From Mobula hypostoma (lineage: Eukaryota): a stretch of 64,000 nucleotides of DNA. The stretch is from positions 13,516,001 through 13,580,000 of the forward strand of contig NC_086103.1 of the NCBI RefSeq assembly GCF_963921235.1, read 5' to 3'. The notes under the pieces are model-generated. The model saw nothing but the letters and a program-made list of their open reading frames with translations. It ran no database searches and was not told the origin of the DNA. The position numbers and the translations under genes were made by a program. The number at the start of each line of letters is the position of its first letter. The stretch's first letter is position 1. Positions 1,436-43,889 of the stretch are shown one piece after another.

Positions 1436-4088
1436 CATTTAAGATCTCCTCCATCTTTTTGGCTTCATGCAGAGATTACCATGCTGATCTTCCAGATGAC
1501 CAATTTGGTCCCTTGCAATCCTGTTGCTCTTACAGTTCCTCAGTTTCTCCTTCACCTTGTCTGCTAGGGCAACCTCATGCCTTCTTGTAGCCTCCTGATT
1601 TCATTCTTACGTGTTCTCTTGCATTTCTTATGCTCTTCAAGTACCACCTTTGTCCTTACATGCCTATACCTGCTATACATCTGTTTTTTTTTCTTAACCA
1701 GGGGCTTCAATATCTCTTGAAAACCAAGGTTACCTAAACCTATCCTTGCCTGACAGGCACATACGAGCTTTGTATTCTCAAAATTCCTCTTTTGATGGCC
1801 TCCCACTTACCAAGTACACCTTTGCCAGAAAACAGCTCGTCCCAATCCACACTTGCCAGATCCTTTCTGATACCATCAGAATTGGCCTTTTGTCCAATTT
1901 AGAACTTCAACCAAAGGACCAGACGTTTCCTTTTCCATAATTACATTGAAACTAATGCCATCATAATCATTAGATGCAAAGTGTTCCCTACACAGACTTG
2001 TGTCACCTGCCCTGTCTCGTTCCCTAACAGCAGATCCAGCATCTTGTTGGGACTTCTATGTACTGTTTAAGGTAACTTCCCTGAACACGTTTGACAAACT
2101 CTAGTCCTTTTACAATGTGGGAGTCACAGTCAATACATGGAAAGTTAAAATCACCTACTATCACAACCTTATGTTCCTTGCAACAGTCTGCAATCTCTCT
2201 ACAAAGTTGTTCCTCTAAGTCTCTCTGACTGTTGGGTGGTCTGTAATAGAGCCCCATCAACATGGTCATACCTTTCTTATTCCTCATTTCGACCCATAAC
2301 GCCTCACTAAATGAGTTTTCCAGTCTGTCCTGATGGAGCACTGCCGTGACATTTTCCCGGACAAGTAACACCACCCCCTCCTCCTTTAATCCTTCCCACT
2401 GTTTTGTCTAAAACAACGGAACCCTGAAATATAGAGTCAGTCCTGCCCCTCTTGCAACCGAGTCTCAGTAATGGCTACAATATCATAATTCCAGGTGTTG
2501 ACACATGCCTTGTGCATTTGTACAGCACATATACAGTACTCATTGTAATTTATAGTTTTCAAATTATGTATTCCAATGTACTGCTGCCGCAAAACAACAA
2601 ATTTCACGACGTATGCCAAACAAGAGAAAACCTGCAGATGCTGGAAGTCCGAGCAACACAAACAAAATGCTAGAGGAACTCAGCAGGCCAGGCAGCATCT
2701 GTGGAAAGAGTACAGTCGATGTTTCAGGCCAAAAGCCTTGGGCAGGACTGGAGAAAAAAAAGCTGAGGGGTAGATTTAAAAGGAGGGGAGAGGGAAACAC
2801 AAGGTGATAGGTGAAACCGGGAGGGGGAGGGATGAAGTAGAGAGCTGGGAAGTTGATATGAAAGGAGATACAGGGCTGGAGAAGGGAGAGTCTAATAGAA
2901 GAGGACAGAAGACCATGGAAGAAAGGGGGGAGGAGCACCAGAGGGAGGCGATGGGCCTCATGACATGTCGGTGATATTAAAGCTGATTTTGATTCATAGA
3001 GTCAAGGCCTCCCGCTGAGTCCATCTGACTGTCATGAATTGATGTGATTCAATCAGTGTGAACGGTATGAATATTTGAGAGAAATTTAGATAGGTACATG
3101 GAGAAGAGGGGTGTGGTGGGCTATGTTCTGGGTGCAGGCTGATGGGAGTAGTTTGCCATGCACTAGATGGGCTGAGTGGCCTGCTTTCATGCTGCCACAA
3201 CTCTACAAGCCTTGTGTCTCAGAGCTCTTCTTCCTGCCACCAAGCCGATTCAACACCAGGCACCTACTGATGTGACTTTTCACCTGAACTGGTGAGAGGT
3301 GAGACGAGAACTCGAGGTCATGGGTTAAGGGTGAAGGGTGAAATGTTTAGGGGGAGGCGGAGGGGGATCTCCTTCACGCAGAGGGTGGTGAGAGTATGGA
3401 ACGAACGGCCAGTGGAATCTGAATCCGAATCAGAACCAGGCTTAATATCACTGGCATATGTTGTGAAACTTGTTGTTTTGGGGCAGCAGTACATAATAAA
3501 ATATCTGAAAATCACAATAAAAATATATATTGGAAATTTAATTAAATAAGTAGCACAAAAAGTGAGGGAAAAAGCTGGGGCAGAGCTTATAGGTTCATTG
3601 TCCATTCAGAAATCTGATGGCGACGAACTGTAACCGAAACATTGAGTGTGGGTCTTCAGGCTCCTGTACCTCCTCCCTGGTGGTAGCGATGAGAAGAGGG
3701 CACCTCCTGGGTGATGGGGGCTTTAAAGAACGGTGGACATGGCTTTGACTGCAAGGTTTAAGAGAAAATTAGATCAGTACATGGATGGGAAGGGAGTGGT
3801 CTGAGTGCAGGTCAATGGGACCAGGCAGATTGACAGTTTAGCATGGACTAGATGGGCTGAAGGGCCTGTATCTGTGCTGTAGTGCTCTACGACACGATGC
3901 CTTTCACTATATCCCCATAGTGTGACAACAATAACACAAATCTAGTTGGAATTCCAATTCCAGACAACTGAGTGGCAGAATAGCAGTCGAAGGGCTGAAT
4001 GGCCTCTTACCCTGAACTGATCTGTTTGGATAAAGCCAGCCTGCATCGGGAAAGAGAAATCAGTGCTGGAGCCAGGCTTAAATTCTCA

Positions 4089-5870
4089 GCACAAGAGATT
4101 CGGCAGGTGCTGGAAATCCAGAGCAAGTCACACAAGGTAAGGACAGGTGAGACCGGGTGAGGGGGAAGATGGGTGGGTGGGGGAGGCGGATGAAGTGAGA
4201 CACTGGGTGGTGATAGGTGAGACCAGGTGAGGGGGAAGATGGGTGGGTGGGAGAGGGGGATGAAGTGAGACACTGGGAGGTGATAGGTGAGACCAGGTGA
4301 GGGGGAAGGTGGGTGGGTGGGGGGGGATGAAGTGAGACACTGGGAGGTGATAGGTGAGACCAGGTGAGGGGGAAGGTGGGTGGGTGGGGGGGGATGAAGT
4401 GAGACACTGGGAGGTGATAGGTGAGACCAGGTGAGGGGGAAGGTGGGTGGGTGGGAGAGGGGGATGAAGTGAGACACTGGGAGGTGATAGGTGAGACCAG
4501 GTGAGGGGAAGGTGGGTGGGGAGGGGGGATGAAGTGAGACACTGGGAGGTGATAGGTGAGACCAGGTGAGGGGGAAGGTGGGTGGGTGGGAGAGGGGGAT
4601 GAAGTGAGACACTGGGTGGTGATAGGTGAGACCAGGTGAGGGGGAGGTGGGTGGGGAGGGGGGATGAAGTGAGACACTGGGAGGTGATAGGTGAGACCAG
4701 GTGAGGGGGAAGGTGGGTGGGTGGGGGGGATGAAGTGAGACACTGGGAGGTGATAGGTGAGACCAGGTGAGGGGGAAGGTGGGTGGGTGGGGGGGGATGA
4801 AGTGAGACACTGGGAGGTGATAGGTGAGACCAGGTGAGGGGGAAGGTGGGTGGGTGGGAGAGGGGGATGAAGTGAGACACTGGGAGGTGATAGGTGAGAC
4901 CAGGTGAGGAGGAAGGTGGGTGGGGAGGGGGGATGAAGTGAGACACTGGGAGGTGATAGGTGAGACCAGGTGAGGGGGAAGGTGGGTGGGTGGGAGAGGG
5001 GGATGAAGTGAGACACTGGGTGGTGATAGGTGAGACCAGGTGAGGGGGAGGTGGGTGGGGAGGGGGGATGAAGTGAGACACTGGGAGGTGATAGGTGAGA
5101 CCAGGTGAGGGGGAAGGTGGGTGCGTGGGGGGGGATGAAGTGAGACACTGGGAGGTGATAGGTGAGACCAGGTGAGGGGGAAGGTGGGTGGGTGGGGGGG
5201 GGATGAAGTGAGACACTGGGAGGTGATAGGTGAGACCAGGTGAGGAGGAAGGTGGGTGGGGAGGGGGGATGAAGTGAGACACTGGGAGGTGATAGGTGAG
5301 ACCAGGTGAGGGGGAAGGTGGGTGGGTGGGGAGGGGGGATGAAGTGAGACACTGGGAGGTGATAGGTGAGACCAGGTGAGGGGGAAGGTGGGTGGGTGGG
5401 GGGGGGGATGAAGTGAGACACTGGGAGGTGATAGGTGAGACCAGGTGAGGGGGAAGGTGGGTGGGTGGGGGGGGATGAAGTGAGACACTGGGAGGTGATA
5501 GGTGAGACCAGGTGAGGGGGAAGGTGGGTGGGTGGGAGAGGGGGATGAAGTGAGACACTGGGTGGTGATAGGTGAGACCAGGTGAGGGGGAGGTGGGTGG
5601 GGAGGGGGGATGAAGTGAGACACTGGGAGGTGATAGGTGAGACCAGGTGAGGGGGAGGGTGGGGAAGACGGATGAGGTGAGAAGCTGGGAGGTGATAGGT
5701 GGAAAAGGTAAAAGGCAGGAGAAGAGGGAATCTGATAAGAGAGGAGAGTGGACCAAGGGAGAAAGGGATGGAGGAGGGGCCCTAGATGGAGATGATCGGC
5801 TGGTAAGGAGAAAAGAAGGGGTGAGATGGAGAACCAGACTTGGGAATAGAAGAAGGGAGGGAGGGATGAG
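4089..5870 (-). mobile_element. Penelope-derived element with internal minisatellite (copy A)
   Basis: Its ends are the reverse complement of the copy at 11650-12922 (shared terminus tctggatttccagca...tctcttgtgc). Confidence 0.6.
4140..5650 (+). repeat. G-rich minisatellite, ~63-68 bp unit, ~23 copies
   Basis: Unit tgaagtgagacactgggaggtgataggtgagaccaggtgagggggaaggtgggtgggtggggggga. It explains the long Pro/His/Ser pseudo-ORFs. Confidence 0.95.
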
Positions 5871-6044
5871 AGCAACTGTACTTTTCCTTTCTCGCTGCTT
5901 ATTCTGGCTGCCGCCCCCTCCCTACCCAGTGCTGATGAAGGGTCTTGGCTGAGAAACATCAACTGTTTATACCAATCAGGAACTTGGGCTGTATTATTAT
6001 TTATTTTCTGACAGTATGTTGTTTCCTGCTATCATCACAATCAC

Positions 6045-11649: not shown

Positions 11650-12922
11650 AGGGGAAACGTAATTCCCCATTTTGATTCCCCTCTCGCCCCTCCTCTTCTC
11701 CTCACCTGTTTTCCACCTTCCTCTTCCTTCCCTTTCTGCATAATGGCATGAACATTGAATTCTGCCACTTCTGGCAATTTCTTCCCCCCCCACCAACTTT
11801 CCTTTTCCATTCCCCATTCTGGCTCCTCTTTAACCCCTTCTCTTCTTCTCACCTGTCTATCACATCCCCAGTTCATCCTTCCCTTTCTCCCTTGGTCCAC
11901 TCTTCTCTCCTATCGGATTCCTTCTTCTCGAGCTCTTGACCTTTTCCACCTATCACCTCCCAGTGTCTCACTTCATCTCCCTCCCCACCCACCCACCTTC
12001 CCCCTCACCTGGTCTCACCTATCACCTCCCAGTGTCTCACTTCATCCCCCCTCCCCACCCACCCACCTTCCCCCTCACCTGGTCTCACCTATCACCTCCC
12101 AGTGTCTCACTTCATCCCCCCTCCCCACCCACCCACCTTCCCCCTCACCTGGTCTCACCTATCACCTCCCAGTGTCTCACTTCATCCCCCTCCTCCCCAC
12201 CCACCCACCTTCCCCCTCACCTTGTCTCACCTATCACCTCCCAGTGTCTCACTTCATCCCCCTCCCCCACCCACCTTCCCCCCTCACCTGGTCTCACCTA
12301 TCACCTCCCAGTGTCTGACCTCATCCCCCTCTCCCACCCACCCACCTTCCCCCTCACCTGGTCTCACCTATCACCTCCTACTGTATCACCTCATCTCCCC
12401 TCTCCCCACTCCCCACTCCCCACCCACCCATCTTCCCCCTCACCTGGTCTCACCTATGACCTTGCAGTGTCTCACTTCATCCCCCCTCCCCTACACACCT
12501 TCCCCCTCACCTGGTCTCACCTATCACCTCGCAGTGTCTCACTTCATCTGCCTCCCCCACACACCTTCCCCCTCACCTGGTCTCACCTATCATCTCCCAG
12601 TGTCTCACTTCATCCCCCTCCCCCACCCACCTTCCCCCTCACCTGGTCTCACCTATCACCTCCCAGTGTCTCACTTCATCCCCCTCCCTACCCACCTTCT
12701 CCCTCACCTGGTCTCACCAATTATCTTCTAACTAGTCCTCCTTCCAACCCCACCTTCTTATTCTGGCTTCTTCCTCCTTCCTTTCTAATCTTGATGAAGG
12801 GTTTTACCCTGAAACTCAAACTGTTTATTCCTCTCCATAGATGCTGCCTGACCTGCTGAATTCCTCCAGCATTGCGTGTGTGTGTTGTTCTGGATTTCCA
12901 GCATCTGCAAAATCTCTTGTGC
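11650..12922 (+). mobile_element. Penelope-derived element with internal minisatellite (copy B, ~12 units at 11945-12720)
   Basis: C-rich reverse complement of the 4140-5650 unit, followed by a Penelope-type terminus. Confidence 0.65.
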
Positions 12923-13543: not shown

Positions 13544-13656
13544 ATGTCTGTGGACGAACAGCAGAACGCTTTGCTGAGGAACTCTCAGCAGGACATCGTC
13601 AGTCACAGCGATGTGGAGGTCCGATCGATGGCTCCCAGCCAGGTCACTGCCCAGAG
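13544..13656 (+). CDS. CD74: CD74 exon 1 (cytoplasmic tail MSVDEQQNALLRNSQQDIVSHSDVEVRSMAPSQVTAQR)
   Basis: Start context gcaccATG. Acidic residues plus a Leu-Leu sorting-type motif (DEQQNALL). Strong donor AG|GTGAGA in phase 2, matching exon 2 and mammalian CD74 intron 1. A perfect kB site lies about 110 bp upstream. Confidence 0.88.
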
Positions 13657-15930
13657 GTGAGACCCCACGACCAAATCACTGGATGTGTGTAAAGCGGGTT
13701 CTTGATTCATCGGGGCGTCAAAGGGTGCAGGGAGAAGGCAGGAGAATGGGACTGAGAGAAAATAAATCAGCCCTGATGGAATGGCGGAGCAGACGCAATG
13801 GGCCGAATGGCCCAACTCTGCTCCTGTGAATTATGGTCTTATAAAGTGCAGACGCTGATATGAGATAGACTGGCAGATCAAGATCTTTAGCGTAGGAGGG
13901 ATCGTGCAAAGAGTCAGATGAACACAAACGGGTGCAGTGGAAACCAATTTATTGGATAGATTGAAACTGGATATTGATATGTTCTTGATTGGAAAGGGCA
14001 TCACAGGGAGAAGGCAGCAGAATGGGGTTGAAATGGCGGAGAAGACTCGATGGGCCGAACGGCCTAATTCTGCTCCTATGTCTTCTAAGCTGCAGGTGTT
14101 CAACTCGTGAAACGCGAGAGATACTGNNNNNNNNNNNNNNNNNNNNNNNNNNNNNNNNNNNNNNNNNNNNNNNNNNNNNNNNNNNNNNNNNNNNNNNNNN
14201 NNNNNNNNNNNNNNNNNNNNNNNNNNNNNNNNNNNNNNNNNNNNNNNNNNNNNNNNNNNNNNNNNNNNNNNNNNNNNNNNNNNNNNNNNNNNNNNNNNNN
14301 NNNNNNNNNNNNNNNNNNNNNNNNNNNNNNNNNNNNNNNNNNNNNNNNNNNNNNNNNNNNNNNNNNNNNNNNNNNNNNNNNNNNNNNNNNNGGGAACTCT
14401 GCAGGTCAGGAGCATCGATACCGTTCCTCTCAGAGCCCTCGGAGAGCAGGTCACCCACCCACCGGCGTCCGGGATGCCAAATATGGGAAGCATCAGGTTG
14501 CAGGGCCGTCGACCCCCGTAAAGATTTTATTACCGTCCCGGGAGGGGAATTCGTTGACCACACCCCACACCCTCATTGGAAATCCGAAATAAAAACAGAG
14601 GAATGCTGGCTAATGCCGGAGGAGCTCCGCAGATCAGACAGCATCTGCGGAGAGGAATAAACAGTCGATATTTCGCGTCGAGACCCTTCCTCAGGACCAC
14701 CCCTCCCCAGTCCAACCACCGTTCCTTCAGCATTTCCAGTCAGTCATTTTGTATAGACAGACACTCCTCTGCCTAGCGTCACTTTATGGGCATACAAGCT
14801 ATCTTATGTATTTATATTTATTGTGTGTGTTTTTTTTTATTATTGTGTGTTTTCTGCTGCATCTGATCTGAAGTAACAATTATTTTGCTTCCCTGTATGA
14901 TGTGTACTGGAAATTACAATAAATTGTCTTGAATTTGGAAAAGAAGTTGGTGGGGAGGGAGGAAGAGAGATACCCACCCAGTGTTTTAATATTCAGGAAC
15001 AACTCTTCATTGTCTGAGCAAACAAAAAAATTATTGAAGGAAATCAGCGGGTCAGGCAGCGTCTGTGGAGAGGGAATTCACACTCAGCGTCTGTGGAGAT
15101 AGAAACAGTTAACAGTCATCGGGTCGAAGGAACCGTTTACCGTGTTTCACTCTCCGCAGATCTTGCTGAGTGTTTGCAGAATTCTTTTTTTTTCGTATTA
15201 CCTTTGAAAAGGTTCCTTAAGGTTGTCATAGCCGGGGGAGGTGGGGTATTGGGTACAAGCTCCCACTGCCTATTAAACGCTCCCAATGGCACGCGTGTCA
15301 AATAGCCTCTGGCAACCAAGTCCAGCTCCCGGCCTTCAGGTGTGTCTTGAACCGTTTCTACTGACAGGAGAAGGGACAAAGCCTTAAAACCAGTCGCATT
15401 GGGCAGATGGGGCTCGCCAGCCGTGGCTGGCAGCTGGTCTGGAAGGAAAACTCTGATCTCAAACCTCCGCTGCCTTACGGCTAGACCCACACATGGGGAA
15501 GGCTTCGGGGGTAAACCTGGAGGAAAGGTCCAGCTCTGGAGCCCCTGAGGCAGCCCGACGTTGAGTTCAACTCCTGCAACACTGCTGGTGCTAAGCAGAA
15601 TCGATCCCTGCCGTTCGTTTGGATTCATCGATTGCGTGGTGAGGGGTAGCAACAGCTGGCTCTCCATCTTGTACTGTACTGCCCCGGCTTGCATACTGGG
15701 TTCTCTGATGTAGATAGCTAGCCATCCGTGGTTGGTCCCGACTGACGGAGGGGCCACAACCCTTGAAAAGTACTCTCTAATCTTGTGGAAATGTTTGATG
15801 ATGAAATTCAATTAAAAATAAATTTTAAAAAAGTACACTCTATGAAACACACTCACACTCGCACGTTGAGATAAAAAAAGACAGAGGGGGACCAAAGATA
15901 GACTTGTGTGCATTGATGCATGCGACCATG

Positions 15931-22385: not shown

Positions 22386-23054
22386 NNNNNNNNNNNNNNN
22401 NNNNNNNNNNNNNNNNNNNNNNNNNNNNNNNNNNNNNNNNNNNNNNNNNNNNNNNNNNNNNNNNNNNNNNNNNNNNNNNNNNNNNNNNNNNNNNNNNNNN
22501 NNNNNNNNNNNNNNNNNNNNNNNNNNNNNNNNNNNNNNNNNNNNNNNNNNNNNNNNNNNNNNNNNNNNNNNNNNNNNNNNNNNNNNNNNNNNNNNNNNNN
22601 NNNNNNNNNNNNNNNNNNNNNNNNNNNTGTCAATCGTTCCCTTTCCATCAATCTCAATAGTCCTAATATTCCACCTGACTCGACTTGCACATCTCTGGGA
22701 TGCAGGAGGAAACTGCAGCATGTAGGGAAGGCACATGCTGAGAGACAGAACATGCAAAACGCACACAGACAGCGCTGGAAGTCGGGTGGTTCCTCCTGTA
22801 TCCAGTAAAGTGGCCATTGAGTGTACGCTCATGGTCTTCTGCTGCTGTAGCCCATTAGCTTCAAGGTTTGGCATGTTGTGCATTCAGGAATGTTCTTCTG
22901 CACACCCCTGCTGTAACACATGGTATTTGAGTTACTGTCACCTTCCTGTCAGCTTGAACCAGTCTGGCCATTCTCCTCTGACCTCTCTCATTAACAAGAG
23001 AGGTGTAACACCTGCAGAACTGCTGCCCACTGGATTTTTTTTTTGTTTATCACA

Positions 23055-24188: not shown

Positions 24189-24367
24189 GGGCACCAGCTG
24201 GAAGCATGTCTTCCTCTACAGCGGCGTGTCGATCCTGGTGGCCATGCTGATCGCTGGGCAGGTGGTCAGTGTCATGTTCCTGTTGAAACAACAGGACAAG
24301 ATAACGAACCTGCAGAAGACGACGGATCGGATTGAACGCAAGCGCCAACCAAGCAGCGGCCCATTCA
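24189..24367 (+). CDS. CD74: CD74 exon 2 (type II transmembrane segment)
   Basis: GTSWKHVFLYSGVSILVAMLIAGQVVSVMFLLKQQDKITNLQKTTDRIERKRQPSSGPF resembles human [27 protein letters not shown]. Acceptor tttcAG, donor GTAAGC, phases 2/1. Confidence 0.95.
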
Positions 24368-25153: not shown

Positions 25154-25236
25154 GACCGAAACCAGTCATGCACATGCGGCCCATGATCATGGATCTTCCT
25201 ATGTCGTACATAGACCCCAAGGCCGAGGCTCCAAAG
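25154..25236 (+). CDS. CD74: CD74 exon 3 (CLIP region RPKPVMHMRPMIMDLPMSYIDPKAEAPK)
   Basis: Met/Pro-rich CLIP-like motif (human [20 protein letters not shown]). Acceptor ccttcAG, donor GTGACC, phases 1/0 as in human. Confidence 0.92.
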
Positions 25237-26636
25237 GTGACCTTCCATCGGAGGCAATGAGGAAGTTGTGATAGAGTGAATGAGTGAAAGGGAGAGAAGG
25301 CACATGAATTAGAGGGACAAATTGTTGGCTGGTTTTCATGTGGGTGGGGGAATGTTTTGCCGGTACAACTGTGCATAGACTGCTCTGTGGAAGTATCTCA
25401 CTGGGTGGGAGAGTGACTTTGTGATGACATTGATGGACACAGTCCATCAAATTAGTTTCAACAGATGCCAGTCCTTGGGGGTCAGTGGAGACTTGAAGAA
25501 CCTTCCATTGGTTCAGAATAGAACTCTATCTATCTATCTTTAACTATCTNNNNNNNNNNNNNNNNNNNNNNNNNNNNNNNNNNNNNNNNNNNNNNNNNNN
25601 NNNNNNNNNNNNNNNNNNNNNNNNNNNNNNNNNNNNNNNNNNNNNNNNNNNNNNNNNNNNNNNNNNNNNNNNNNNNNNNNNNNNNNNNNNNNNNNNNNNN
25701 NNNNNNNNNNNNNNNNNNNNNNNNNNNNNNNNNNNNNNNNNNNNNNNNNNNNNNNNNNNNNNNNNNNNNNNNNNNNNNNNNNNNNNNNNNNNNNNNNNNN
25801 NNNNNNNNNNNNNNNNNNNNNNNNNNNNNNNNNNNNNNNNNNNNNNNNNNNNNNNNNNNNNNNNNNNNNNNNNNNNNNNNNNNNNNNNNNNNNNNNNNNN
25901 NNNNNNNNNNNNNNNNNNNNNNNNNNNNNNNNNNNNNNNNNNNNNNNNNNNNNNNNNNNNNNNNNNNNNNNNNNNNNNNNNNNNNNNNNNNNNNNNNNNN
26001 NNNNNNNNNNNNNNNNNNNNNNNNNNNNNNNNNNNNNNNNNNNNNNNNNNNNNNNNNNNNNNNNNNNNNNNNNNNNNNNNNNNNNNNNNNNNNNNNNNNN
26101 NNNNNNNNNNNNNNNNNNNNNNNNNNNNNNNNNNNNNNNNNNNNNNNNNNNNNNNNNNNNNNNNNNNNNNNNNNNNNNNNNNNNNNNNNNNNNNNNNNNN
26201 NNNNNNNNNNNNNNNNNNNNNNNNNNNNNNCCCCTCTCTTCTCCCCTCTCTTCCCCCTCTCTTCCCCCTCTCTTCCCCCTCTNNNNNNNNNNNNNNNNNN
26301 NNNNNNNNNNNNNNNNNNNNNNNNNNNNNNNNNNNNNNNNNNNNNNNNNNNNNNNNNNNNNNNNNNNNNNNNNNNNNNNNNNNNNNNNNNNNNNNNNNNN
26401 NNNNNNNNNNNNNNNNNNNNNNNNNNNNNNNNNNNNNNNNNNTGCACAATGTCTGTCATTATTTATATCTTGTTTTTTATAAATTCTATTCTATTTCTTA
26501 GTTTTCCTGTGACTTGCTGTAAGAAAATGAACTTTAAGGTGGGCTATGGTGACGTACACGTAGTTTGACAATAAGTGGACGATGACGGTTGTGAACACTG
26601 GGATGGTCATCTTCTTCACCCTTGTGTTTTCCACAG

Positions 26637-26696
26637 GATCCAGCAACCACTCCCCAGCCAATGACCATGCTGGAACAAGTGCAACAGCTACTGAAG
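26637..26696 (+). CDS. CD74: CD74 exon 4 (DPATTPQPMTMLEQVQQLLK)
   Basis: 60-nt phase 0/0 exon with acceptor ttttccacAG and donor GTGTGT. Its end resembles human TEDHVMHLLQ. Confidence 0.88.
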
Positions 26697-27773: not shown

Positions 27774-27869
27774 GAAGGAAACAAGAGCGTGGAGATGCCA
27801 GAACTGAAGGAGGGTTTCTCCAACAACCTGAAACTTCTGAAACAGAGCCTGAAGGAAGGTGACTGGCAG
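27774..27869 (+). CDS. CD74: CD74 exon 5 (trimerisation domain EGNKSVEMPELKEGFSNNLKLLKQSLKEGDWQ)
   Basis: 96-nt phase 0/0 exon that aligns to human [25 protein letters not shown]. Contains an N-K-S sequon. Confidence 0.93.
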
Positions 27870-30342: not shown

Positions 30343-30445
30343 GAATTTGAATCTTGGCTTCAGAATTGGCTTCTCTTCCAACTTGTTCAGGGCGAGAAGA
30401 AACCTGCTCCGACCAGAGCACCCAGGATCCAACCCCAGCCTCAGG
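30343..30445 (+). CDS. CD74: CD74 exon 6 (end of trimerisation domain EFESWLQNWLLFQLVQGEKKPAPTRAPRIQPQPQ)
   Basis: Matches human VFESWMHHWLLFEM. Acceptor ttttccAG, donor GTATGT, phases 0/1. Confidence 0.95.
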
Positions 30446-35129: not shown

Positions 35130-35237
35130 GTAGGAAGATGTCCAGCATGGCGATGAGGCCAATGCTCCATGTTCTGCCACTCTCCGCAGACCAACCCAAG
35201 GCAGCCGAAATGCCCGAACTGGTGCCTGTAACAAGGG
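35130..35237 (+). CDS. CD74: CD74 extra cassette exon, CLIP-like (GRKMSSMAMRPMLHVLPLSADQPKAAEMPELVPVTR)
   Basis: 108 nt, phase 1/1, acceptor tttttgcttcaacAG, donor GTAACT, open in the required frame. It sits in a non-repeat island and is 11/19 identical to the exon-3 CLIP. Confidence 0.8.
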
Positions 35238-39636: not shown

Positions 39637-39834
39637 CCAAAAGACCAGAGACCGACTGTGAGAGGCAGCGCAGGGAGAAGATGATTCCTGGCAGTTTCCG
39701 TCCCAGCTGTGACCAGGATGGGGACTTTGAACCGAAGCAGTGTTGGCCCAGTACAGGATTCTGCTGGTGCACCTATCCAAATGGGACTAAGATTGAAGGA
39801 ACTGCAACTCGAGATCCCCGAGATAGTTGCAAAA
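39637..39834 (+). CDS. CD74: CD74 thyroglobulin type-1 exon (p41-type exon 6b)
   Basis: AKRPETDCERQRREKMIPGSFRPSCDQDGDFEPKQCWPSTGFCWCTYPNGTKIEGTATRDPRDSCK has 6 Cys, QC and CWC motifs and an NGT sequon. 198 nt, phase 1/1, donor GTAGGC. Confidence 0.96.
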
Positions 39835-42119: not shown

Positions 42120-43889
42120 GTCATTGGATCCTTCAGTGTGTTCTTTCCTGTCTCTTAGCTTAAATTAGATTCTCTTTCCACCTTTCGGCTTCCTAAACCC
42201 AGGTGAGTCAAGCACTTTAGGCTTGGACACATGAGTAACATGGAGTGTCCTTTGATGTCCAGTACAGAAATAGCTGCTTTGTCTGACTAAACTACCCAGC
42301 CTCTCGCTTCCCTAATCCTCTAATTAAATTTGCCTGTCCTTCCTCAGCCAAATGTTTCTTGAGCTTAAAGCAGCAAGCTCTCCATGCTCGCTGCTCTCCT
42401 GAGCGTGGATGGATTGTCAAAAGTCTCTTAAGTGTTTGACAGACATCCACCAGCGTAATGTTACGTGTGCCTGCGCTCCTTGCCTCTCACCACTGCTGCT
42501 TCCAGATGTGGCGTTGCAGGGAGAACCGATATTGATTAAACAAACACTCTGGAGAGGAGCAGGGCAGTGGGGCCGAATGGCTGGCTCTTGCTCCTGTTCT
42601 GTGTGCTTGTGATATACTGGCTGATCAAATCACCCTGCATAACCTAAATCTAAACTTAAAAAAATTCTTGCCTGTGTCCAGTAACCTCCTGAGCTCTTTG
42701 CTTATTAAGAACCTGTCCAGCTCCGTATTGCAAATATTCAAAGATAAAGGAATTGTAGAACCAAATTCCTCATGATAATTTCCAAACTGAAACGTGTTTT
42801 TCTCATCTCTTACAGTTTTTAAAGCTTAAGGAAGCCACAGCGTTGGATGGGGTCATCTAGACCAGCTTTACTCCCCAGACAAACATTAATTGCATAGATT
42901 GATTCTTTTATTAACATCAGATTTGACTGATAACTGTTGATATCTGACTTGTAGCCAGTAGATTCATTTCCTTATTTGCTTAAGATTCATCCACAAGAAT
43001 TTTTTTCTCTTAGAAGTAGAAAAATCAGACTGTGCCTCAATGGTTGAAATGCCTCCAACCTGATGGCATGAACATCGATTTCTCCAAATTCCATTGATTT
43101 CTCTCTGCTTCCCCTTCTGTTTTTTTCCATTCCCCATACTGGATTCCTTCTCACCCCTTCCCTTCTCCTCACATGCCCTGACCATCATCTCCCTCTGGTT
43201 CCCCTTTTCCCTCCCTTTGTCACATGGTCCTCTCTCCTCTCCTATCAGATTCCTTCTTCTTCAGCTCTTTACCTCTTCTACCTATCACCTCCCAGCTTCT
43301 TACTTCACCCCCCCTTCCCCCACCCACCCTTCTCTTTTCCTCACCTGCTCATCACCTCCCTTTGGTGGCTTCTCATGAGGGGCAGAGTAAATCATAGGGG
43401 AACAGTTTAAGATTCTCTGCAAAACAACTGCATCGGTGTTATTACTTACCATTTTGTTTGAAGTTAGAACTACCTATAATTAATTTGCTAAATAGTAATA
43501 TTGCTTCTAGATCTCATTTAATATCTGGTAATCGCTAACTACCGCTTGGGGAGATTATTTTGCAATAAAGGAAATGGCTTTAATTTTGATTTTCTTTGGG
43601 TTGTGGAGACAGTTGAAATGGGCTGAGAATTGAACATCCAGCTTATCACAAAGGACTATTAAACTTGGCATCAGTTGTTAAATGTACAGGTTGTGTGTGT
43701 GAGTGTGTGTTTGTGTCTGTGTAAGGCAAAATGCTGTGGCATTGAACAAGTCTACTTTGGACAGATGCGCGCAGCTTCAAGATTGGGCGACCTGGCATTT
43801 CACCTCAAGTTCCAACGGTCAGAGCTGATAACTTCATGCATCACCAGCCAAACTCAAAAATAAATCCCTGCTGTCATGGCTCTTTGGTG

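What the first reader, a model, noticed from the sequence alone, without database searches (positions are those of the whole stretch)
35130..35237. A second CLIP-like exon in CD74: a possible two-CLIP invariant chain
Seen in sequence: a clean 108-nt phase 1/1 exon between the trimerisation exon and the thyroglobulin exon encodes MAMRPMLHVLPLSADQPKA. The exon-3 CLIP reads MHMRPMIMDLPMSYIDPKA, giving 11/19 identities with no gaps. Six of the identical residues use different synonymous codons (cgg/agg, ccc/cca, ctt/ctg, cct/cca, tcg/tcc, gcc/gca), which suggests an old duplication conserved at the protein level. Established: mammalian Ii has one CLIP that fills the MHC-II groove. From memory, cartilaginous-fish Ii was reported to have an extended linker before the Tg domain, but I do not know of that linker being described as a CLIP paralogue. 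Inference: one chain could present two groove-binding peptides. These might serve different class II allotypes or lineages, engage additional heterodimers, or act as a spliceable alternative placeholder in a lineage where DM is reported absent.
Basis: partly seen in the sequence, partly recalled or inferred. Interest (0 to 1): 0.9.

Follow-up and report, generated by a model that had tools for sequence, protein, structure and literature searches.

The report
CLIP-like linker exon in ray CD74
The invariant chain (CD74) gene of this ray, like that of every other cartilaginous fish examined, has a constitutive extra exon whose first half looks like an ancient copy of the CLIP peptide that plugs the MHC class II groove. 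The chain may therefore carry two groove-binding segments, but no binding has been tested.

Summary
Window 35130-35237 is a 108-nt exon with AG/GT splice sites and phase 1/1. It lies between the last trimerisation exon (30343-30445) and the thyroglobulin exon (39637-39834) of CD74. Its peptide matches the exon-3 CLIP at 11 of 19 residues, and six of the identical residues use different codons.

The exon is real and constitutive. An orthologous segment is present in every complete chondrichthyan CD74 model, including rays, skates, sharks and the chimaera Callorhinchus. It is also in the cloned nurse-shark protein and in intron-free RNA-derived contigs from skates. Tetrapods lack it. It is the 'extended linker' before the Tg domain that I recall from the abstract of Criscitiello et al. 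2012, which is not held in the library.

The resemblance to CLIP is not chance. Composition-preserving shuffles give z = 6.2 here and up to 9.8 in catsharks. The profile-profile P-value is 4.5e-6. A profile built from shark linkers alone picks the ray's CLIP exon as its second-best hit in the window.

The CLIP-like first half is a conserved island (52% mean identity) inside a fast-evolving linker. The motif has decayed in skates, Narcine, one squalomorph and the chimaeras. The exon is not a cassette.

Most likely it is an ancient duplicate of the CLIP exon. A second groove-binding role is plausible but untested. I found no description of this paralogy in the searchable literature.

The parts
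13544..13656 (+). CD74 exon 1 (start codon, cytosolic tail)
   Evidence: tblastn with Mobula CD74 P0154, 97% identity; donor GT at 13657
24189..24367 (+). CD74 exon 2 (transmembrane helix and stalk)
   Evidence: 98% identity to P0154; splice sites
25154..25236 (+). CD74 exon 3, canonical CLIP (CLIP1), phase 1/0
   Evidence: encodes RPKPVMHMRPMIMDLPMSYIDPKAEAPK; mean pairwise identity 0.69 among 22 chondrichthyans
26637..26696 (+). CD74 exon 4
27774..27869 (+). CD74 exon 5 (trimerisation domain)
30343..30445 (+). CD74 exon 6 (last trimerisation helix plus Pro-rich tail), phase 0/1
35130..35237 (+). The finding: constitutive 'linker' exon, phase 1/1, 36 codons
   Evidence: AG/GT and open frame; 92% identity to the Mobula protein; orthologous segment in all complete chondrichthyan CD74 proteins and in skate cDNA contigs L001, L002, L004
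35144..35179 (+). CLIP-like 12-residue core SMAMRPMLHVLP, aligning with VMHMRPMIMDLP of exon 3
   Evidence: 7/12 identities in the window. Shared consensus: hydrophobic, x, hydrophobic, basic, P, M, M/L/I, x, x, L/M, P. The central P is kept in 23/23 species tabulated
39637..39834 (+). Thyroglobulin type-1 exon, phase 1/1, alternatively spliced in other species
   Evidence: isoforms with and without it
42816..42829 (+). Terminal coding exon (x-F-K-A-stop), phase 1
   Evidence: acceptor ttacag at 42810-42815 and the F-K-A-stop reading; matches the C-termini of the Mobula and Hemitrygon proteins

Best explanation
The window holds the CD74 (MHC class II invariant chain) gene of a myliobatiform ray; the predicted protein is 96% identical to that of Mobula birostris. 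Exon 35130-35237 is a constitutive coding exon found in cartilaginous fishes and absent from tetrapods. It encodes the flexible linker between the trimerisation domain and the optional Tg domain. Its first ~28 codons are an ancient duplicate of the CLIP exon (exon 3). The two share the same 5' phase, a basic start, the core hydrophobic-x-hydrophobic-basic-P-M-M/L...L/M-P, and in several lineages a P-K ending. The duplication happened before chimaeras and elasmobranchs split. The core has been kept by selection in most lineages while the rest of the linker changes fast. The mechanism I think most likely is that the core is a second, tethered CLIP-like segment able to lie in a class II groove. 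It hangs from the membrane-distal end of the Ii trimer, near where the grooves sit. There it could cover additional or different class II dimers, or compete with CLIP1 in animals that lack DM. Shown here: the exon, its inclusion in mRNA, its phylogenetic spread, the significance of the similarity, and the conserved island. Inferred: duplication as the origin (about 0.75) and groove binding (about 0.4). The confidence given is for the whole chain of claims, including groove binding.
For: Exon anatomy. Inclusion in transcripts and models: skate Logan contigs of about 1 kb carry an uninterrupted ORF that contains the linker but not Tg. The nurse shark protein P0212 carries it, and so do about 60 isoform models and variants. 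Callorhinchus P0213 and a second holocephalan-like contig product, P0214, have GRKMISSMMFKPMAL at the same place. Tetrapod CD74 proteins have nothing there. Similarity beyond chance: Smith-Waterman against 5000 composition-preserving shuffles gives z = 6.2 in the window, 7.8 in Hemitrygon, 8.0 and 9.8 in Scyliorhinus, 5.7 in Heterodontus and 4.7 in Heptranchias. hhalign of the CLIP1 profile against the linker profile gives P = 4.5e-6, probability 87%, 23 aligned columns. An HMM built from shark linkers only finds, among 2545 ORF pieces of this ray window, the linker exon (E = 6.5e-7) and then the CLIP exon (E = 0.0017); the next hit is at E = 0.98. Conserved island: mean pairwise identity is 0.52 for the CLIP-like half, 0.23 for the C-terminal half and 0.39 for the preceding Pro-rich tail. 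Old, independently evolving copies: synonymous sites differ, the introns show no similarity, and there is no excess similarity within a species (diagonal 22.7 against off-diagonal 22.9). AlphaFold2 predicts both CLIP1 and the linker as unstructured coil with pLDDT below 50, as expected for peptide-like segments.
Against: No binding data exist and no complex could be modelled here. The segment lies after the trimerisation domain, not between the membrane and that domain as every known CLIP does. Position -5 is an almost invariant Ser where CLIP1 has I/M/V. Positions +3 and +4 (M, D in CLIP1) are free in the linker. The motif is weak or lost in skates, Narcine, one squalomorph and the holocephalans, and the nurse shark has S in place of the central P. 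In one skate cDNA pair the linker has 23.5 nonsynonymous and 0.5 synonymous differences. The CLIP-like half there evolves at about the neutral rate (8 changes per 43 sites against 21 per 152 synonymous sites elsewhere, not significant), and the C-terminal half evolves faster than neutral. Pfam's CLIP-region model PF09307 does not match linker pieces from eight species. The reverse profile search, shark CLIP1 HMM against the window, ranks the linker exon only third at E = 4.4.
Confidence: 0.45

Rival explanations
1. Relic duplicate with a different job. The exon did arise from the CLIP exon, but today it is only a flexible tether or processing site for the C-terminal Tg domain, for example a protease-sensitive or modified stretch around the invariant I-Y/F-S-S and M-x-P-M residues. 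It never enters a class II groove.
For: It sits exactly before the Tg domain and is predicted disordered. The most invariant residues (G-R-K/R start, S-S) are not shared with CLIP1. The motif is eroded in several lineages that keep the exon. Protein evolution is fast in skates. Pfam's CLIP model does not match.
Against: The exon is retained in the Tg-less isoforms too (skate cDNAs, Pristis, Amblyraja, Heterodontus and Chiloscyllium models), so it is not merely a Tg tether. The positions that stay conserved over roughly 400 My are largely those shared with CLIP1: hydrophobic -4, M -2, basic -1, P 0, M/L +1 and +2, L +5, P +6.
Confidence: 0.3
2. Convergence or composition. A Met/Pro-rich linker resembles the Met/Pro-rich CLIP without common descent. 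The resemblance reflects similar biophysical demands or chance.
For: The alignable stretch is short (about 12-23 columns). hhalign probability is 87%, not higher. The reverse HMM search is not significant. There is no nucleotide or intron similarity. The 3' phases differ (0 against 1).
Against: Shuffles that keep composition are beaten at p <= 0.0002 in several independent lineages. The alignment starts near the first codon of both exons, with the same 5' phase and a basic start, and runs to the end of exon 3, where several species have a matching P-K ending. A sharks-only profile cross-detects the ray CLIP exon at E = 0.0017.
Confidence: 0.15
3. Alternatively spliced cassette.
For: Phase 1/1 and 108 nt make skipping frame-preserving. 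One database protein, P0166 from Chiloscyllium punctatum, lacks the segment.
Against: P0166 comes from a draft contig with a 3368-base run of N exactly between exon 6 and the Tg exon (L003:15701-19068), so the exon was simply not assembled. All other models and all RNA-derived contigs keep it.
Confidence: 0.04

Closest known systems
CLIP region of the invariant chain (exon 3 of CD74; human residues about 81-104)
   Same: Both share a hydrophobic/Met-rich core around an invariant Pro followed by L/M-P, sit in a disordered part of the lumenal chain, and have the same 5' exon phase. The similarity is statistically significant.
   Different: The linker lies after the trimerisation domain instead of before it. 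It is less conserved, has Ser at -5 and free +3/+4 positions, is not matched by Pfam PF09307, and has no evidence of groove occupancy.
'Extended linker preceding the thyroglobulin-like domain' of cartilaginous-fish Ii (Criscitiello et al. 2012, Dev Comp Immunol 36:521; cited in PMC8010645; wording recalled from the abstract, paper not held)
   Same: It is the same segment. The nurse shark protein from that work (P0212) carries ERKIFSSVAMKSMMVSLP at the homologous place.
   Different: As far as I recall, and as far as the searchable library shows, it was described as a linker and not as a CLIP paralogue. I could not read the paper to confirm this.
Duplicated CLIP region in CD74a of Ostariophysi (Dijkstra and Yamaguchi 2019, Immunogenetics 71:233; recalled from the abstract, paper not held)
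   Same: It is a precedent for an invariant chain with two CLIP-like stretches in DM-less fishes.
   Different: As I recall it, that one is a tandem duplication within the CLIP region of a teleost paralogue. Here the copy is a separate exon on the far side of the trimerisation domain, in a different vertebrate class, and much older. I did not test the ostariophysan case.
p41/p31-type alternative splicing of the Tg exon of CD74
   Same: The neighbouring Tg exon is also phase 1/1, and it is present or absent in chondrichthyan isoforms.
   Different: The linker exon itself is not alternatively spliced in any model or transcript seen.

Membership tests
CD74 / MHC class II invariant chain gene | Type II membrane protein with CLIP region (PF09307), trimerisation domain (PF08831) and optional Tg type-1 domain (PF00086), in the conserved exon order | tested here: met
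   The window's exons align at 91-98% identity to Mobula CD74 P0154, which carries all three Pfam domains. The spliced frame is open across eight exons.
Chondrichthyan Ii 'extended linker' exon | Extra segment between the trimerisation domain and the Tg domain, present in cartilaginous fishes and absent in tetrapods | tested here: met
   Searches show it in rays, skates, sharks, nurse shark and Callorhinchus. It is absent in mammal, bird, turtle and frog CD74.
[quoted passage not shown] | Sequence related to the CLIP core | tested here: met
   z = 6.2 to 9.8 against shuffles; hhalign P = 4.5e-6; cross-detection at E = 0.0017.
[quoted passage not shown] | Position between the transmembrane helix and the trimerisation domain | tested here: not met
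   It lies C-terminal to the trimerisation domain.
[quoted passage not shown] | Occupies the class II peptide groove and remains there after Ii proteolysis | not testable with these tools
   No complex modelling or binding assay was available. The AlphaFold2 monomer shows only disorder.
[quoted passage not shown] | Recognised by the curated model of the region (Pfam PF09307 MHC2-interact) | tested here: not met
   Linker pieces from eight species gave no PF09307 match at E <= 10. The model spans the tail, TM and CLIP, so a short piece is a hard target.
Alternatively spliced cassette exon | Isoforms with and without the exon | tested here: not met
   All models and transcripts include it. The single exception is explained by an assembly gap.

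The most novel reading that the evidence does not exclude
Cartilaginous-fish invariant chain carries two functional groove-binding peptides. The second is tethered to the membrane-distal end of the Ii trimer. It could work as a built-in competitor or exchange aid for CLIP1, or as the placeholder for a second class II lineage, in vertebrates that never had DM. That would be an ancestral solution to CLIP removal that bony vertebrates later lost.
Probability: 0.3. Interest if true: 0.85.

Novelty: new variant of a known kind. Interest (0 to 1): 0.6.

Why it matters
Sharks, rays and teleosts lack DM, and how they manage CLIP is an open question in comparative immunology (discussed in PMC8010645 and PMC4219347). 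A conserved CLIP paralogue on the same chain gives a concrete, cheap hypothesis to test with peptide binding, immunopeptidomics and Ii deletion constructs. It would also change how the 'extended linker' of shark Ii is read. Even if the segment does not bind class II, the exon is a clear case of an internal exon duplication in CD74 that predates the chimaera-elasmobranch split. Its short conserved core also marks a functional site that nobody has assigned.

Tried and rejected
1. Orthologous genomic DNA for codon-level tests. The look-up of encoding contigs returned no DNA for Mobula, Hemitrygon and S. torazame because the files were too large, and Pristis was not on record. Only one skate cDNA pair could be analysed, so there is no proper dN/dS across the clade.
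2. The spliced window protein has no reference, so it could not be given to the database tools. I entered through the Tg exon and used the 96%-identical Mobula protein as a proxy.
3. Pfam on linker pieces found no CLIP-model match.
4. Test for concerted evolution or gene conversion between the two exons was negative.
5. Variable sites among 14 near-identical skate transcript products were not enriched in the linker (2/36 against 6/221, p = 0.31).
6. The AlphaFold2 monomer shows the linker as disordered, which says little about function.
7. It would give T-stop, has no orthologue support, and 42816 fits instead.
8. Literature. Seven full-text searches found nothing on a second CLIP or CLIP-like linker in shark Ii. 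The two key papers (Criscitiello 2012; Dijkstra and Yamaguchi 2019) are not held, so prior description cannot be excluded.
9. Runs of N in the window and in L003 were left as they are.

Full report
**What is at the coordinates.** The window reads ...caacag|GTAGGAAG...ACAAGG|gtaact at 35130-35237. That is 108 nt with an AG acceptor and a GT donor. With the one base left over from the upstream exon the frame is open and encodes G-RKMSSMAMRPMLHVLPLSADQPKA... through ...VPVTR, leaving one base for the next exon (phase 1/1). The upstream exon (30343-30445) encodes the last helix of the invariant-chain trimerisation domain followed by a Pro-rich tail. The downstream exon (39637-39834) is a thyroglobulin type-1 domain. 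Using orthologous proteins I placed all coding exons of the gene:
- 13544-13656
- 24189-24367
- 25154-25236 (CLIP)
- 26637-26696
- 27774-27869
- 30343-30445
- 35130-35237
- 39637-39834
- a terminal exon starting at 42816 that reads x-F-K-A-stop

The 19 residues from 35147 and the 19 residues from 25168 share 11 identities without a gap. Nucleotide identity is 33/57, and the flanking introns show no similarity. The pattern M.MRPM is expected 0.0024 times in the six-frame translation of the window and occurs twice, both times in exons of this gene.

**Whose gene.** A phmmer search with the Tg exon picked out one single-domain 325-residue protein at 70% identity, a skate CD74. Three word-indexed searches then collected CD74 from rays, skates, sawfish, electric ray, lamniform, carcharhiniform, orectolobiform, heterodontiform and hexanchiform sharks. 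They also returned the cloned nurse shark protein and Callorhinchus. The window's predicted protein is 96% identical to that of Mobula birostris and groups with it in a tree. The window therefore comes from a myliobatiform ray.

**Is the exon used?** Yes, and apparently always.
- Every complete chondrichthyan protein has a homologous segment between the Pro-rich tail and the Tg domain.
- Three Logan contigs of 1.0-1.1 kb from skate sequencing runs carry uninterrupted ORFs in which the linker is joined directly to the terminal exon, with Tg skipped. These are spliced mRNAs.
- The nurse shark protein deposited with the 2012 cloning paper has it as well.
- Across about 60 isoform models and transcript variants, the Tg exon and a small penultimate exon come and go, but the linker stays.
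- The single protein without it, from a draft Chiloscyllium punctatum assembly, comes from a contig with 3368 N exactly between exon 6 and the Tg exon. That is an assembly artefact, not skipping.
- Mammal, bird, turtle and frog CD74 have nothing at this place. One frog isoform has an unrelated insert there.

This is the 'extended linker preceding the thyroglobulin-like domain' of cartilaginous-fish Ii. I recall that wording from the abstract of Criscitiello et al. 2012. The paper is cited in PMC8010645 but is not held in the library.

**Is the resemblance to CLIP real?**
- Within each species I aligned the exon-3 peptide to the linker peptide and compared the score with 5000 shuffles of the linker that keep its composition. 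The z-scores are 6.2 in the window, 7.8 in Hemitrygon, 4.5 in Pristis, 8.0 and 9.8 in the two Scyliorhinus, 5.7 in Heterodontus, 4.7 in Heptranchias and 4.2-4.9 in lamniforms.
- The similarity is not significant in skates, Narcine, one squalomorph-like sequence or, by eye, the holocephalans.
- Profile against profile (hhalign) gives P = 4.5e-6 over 23 columns, probability 87%.
- An HMM built only from shark linkers was run against 2545 ORF pieces of this ray window. It finds the linker exon (E = 6.5e-7) and then the CLIP exon (E = 0.0017), with the next hit at E = 0.98. The reverse search is not significant.
- Anchored on the invariant Pro, the two segments share eight of twelve positions: hydrophobic (-4), hydrophobic (-2), basic (-1), P (0), M or L (+1), M, L or I (+2), L or M (+5), P (+6).
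- The alignment begins near the first codon of both exons, which share 5' phase 1 and a basic start. It runs to the end of exon 3, where several species have a matching P-K.

This pattern fits duplication of the whole exon better than convergence on a short motif. There is no sign of gene conversion: a linker is no more like the CLIP of its own species than that of any other.

**Constraint.** Mean pairwise identity among 22 chondrichthyans is 0.52 for the CLIP-like half of the exon, 0.23 for its C-terminal half and 0.39 for the preceding Pro-rich tail. For comparison it is 0.69 for CLIP1, 0.80 for the trimerisation helix and 0.61 for Tg. The CLIP-like half is therefore a conserved island in a poorly conserved region. 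On a shorter time scale the picture is less tidy.
- In the one cDNA pair available (two skates), the exon has 23.5 nonsynonymous and 0.5 synonymous differences, against 24 and 21 in the rest of the gene (Fisher p about 1e-4).
- In that pair the CLIP-like half evolves at about the neutral rate.
- The C-terminal half evolves faster than the gene's synonymous rate (p = 0.002).

Skates are also the lineage where the motif has drifted furthest from CLIP1.

**How it may work.** AlphaFold2 on the Mobula protein with 29 aligned sequences gives confident structure only for Tg. It leaves both CLIP1 and the whole linker as low-confidence coil, which is what a peptide-like, partner-dependent segment would look like. 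From the established architecture of the Ii-class II complex, CLIP runs through the membrane-distal groove and the trimerisation domain sits beyond it. The chain leaving that domain therefore emerges near the level of the grooves. A core on a tether of about 20 Pro-rich residues could plausibly reach one. I therefore commit to a second, tethered CLIP-like groove binder as the most likely mechanism, at roughly 0.4. Origin by exon duplication is at roughly 0.75, and the exon's reality is near certainty.

The main rival (0.3) is a relic duplicate kept for another purpose, such as a processing or modification site. This fits the invariant S-S and G-R-K residues that CLIP1 lacks, the lineage-specific erosion and the fast evolution. 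Convergence (0.15) and a cassette-exon reading (0.04) are less likely. The binding register cannot be decided from sequence. If the Pro sits at P6 as in human CLIP, the linker puts Ser at P1. If position -4 is P1, both segments offer a hydrophobic anchor.

**Known or new.** The exon itself is known as a linker. An invariant chain with a duplicated CLIP region has, as I recall from the abstract of Dijkstra and Yamaguchi 2019, been reported for ostariophysan CD74a. That is a tandem duplication in a teleost paralogue. I found no paper that calls the chondrichthyan linker a CLIP paralogue, but the two most relevant papers could not be read. I rate it a new variant of a known kind, of moderate to high interest to comparative immunologists. 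It offers a directly testable idea about class II loading in DM-less vertebrates.

**Earlier scan notes.** Two notes from this same window were returned. The one proposing two adjacent cassette exons is contradicted for the linker exon by the isoform survey.

Noticed in passing
window 2700-5900 (- strand) and 11900-12800 (+ strand): Long arrays of a repeat of about 66-69 nt whose translation reads ...GLTYHLPVSHFIPPPHPPSPSP... They lie in opposite orientation, both upstream of CD74 exon 1. GC is 0.59 and GC skew 0.71 at 4001-6000. Probably a minisatellite in inverted copies.
   Followed up: no
window about 17158(-), 20875(+), 21846(+), 28108(-), 35884(+), 56687(+): A recurrent element whose translation contains YVLPV...SSGCSGFLPQSKDV appears at least six times on both strands, including about 650 bp downstream of the linker exon. 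It looks like a dispersed SINE/LINE-type repeat in the CD74 introns and flanks.
   Followed up: no
L003:15701-19068 (Chiloscyllium punctatum draft contig): A 3368-base run of N sits between exon 6 and the Tg exon. It explains why the deposited protein P0166 lacks the linker segment, which shows how an assembly gap can mimic exon skipping.
   Followed up: yes
P0218 (Mixophyes fleayi CD74 isoform X1), residues about 197-240: A frog isoform has an unrelated Ser/Thr-rich insert of about 44 residues at the same junction between the trimerisation domain and Tg. Isoform X2 (P0219) lacks it. The junction seems prone to acquiring extra exons.
   Followed up: no
window 39834 / 42816: In the window the Tg exon leaves an A, so the junction codon with the terminal exon is ATT (Ile). 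The Mobula and Hemitrygon proteins have Phe there. The small penultimate exon seen in skates, sawfish and sharks (...DDPN.SG...) was not found between 39835 and 42816 and is also missing from the Mobula and Hemitrygon models.
   Followed up: partly
window 14127-14391, 22386-22627, 25550-26230, 26283-26442: Four runs of N (1348 bases in all) lie in CD74 introns 1 and 3. No coding exon appears to be affected, and they were left as they are.
   Followed up: no
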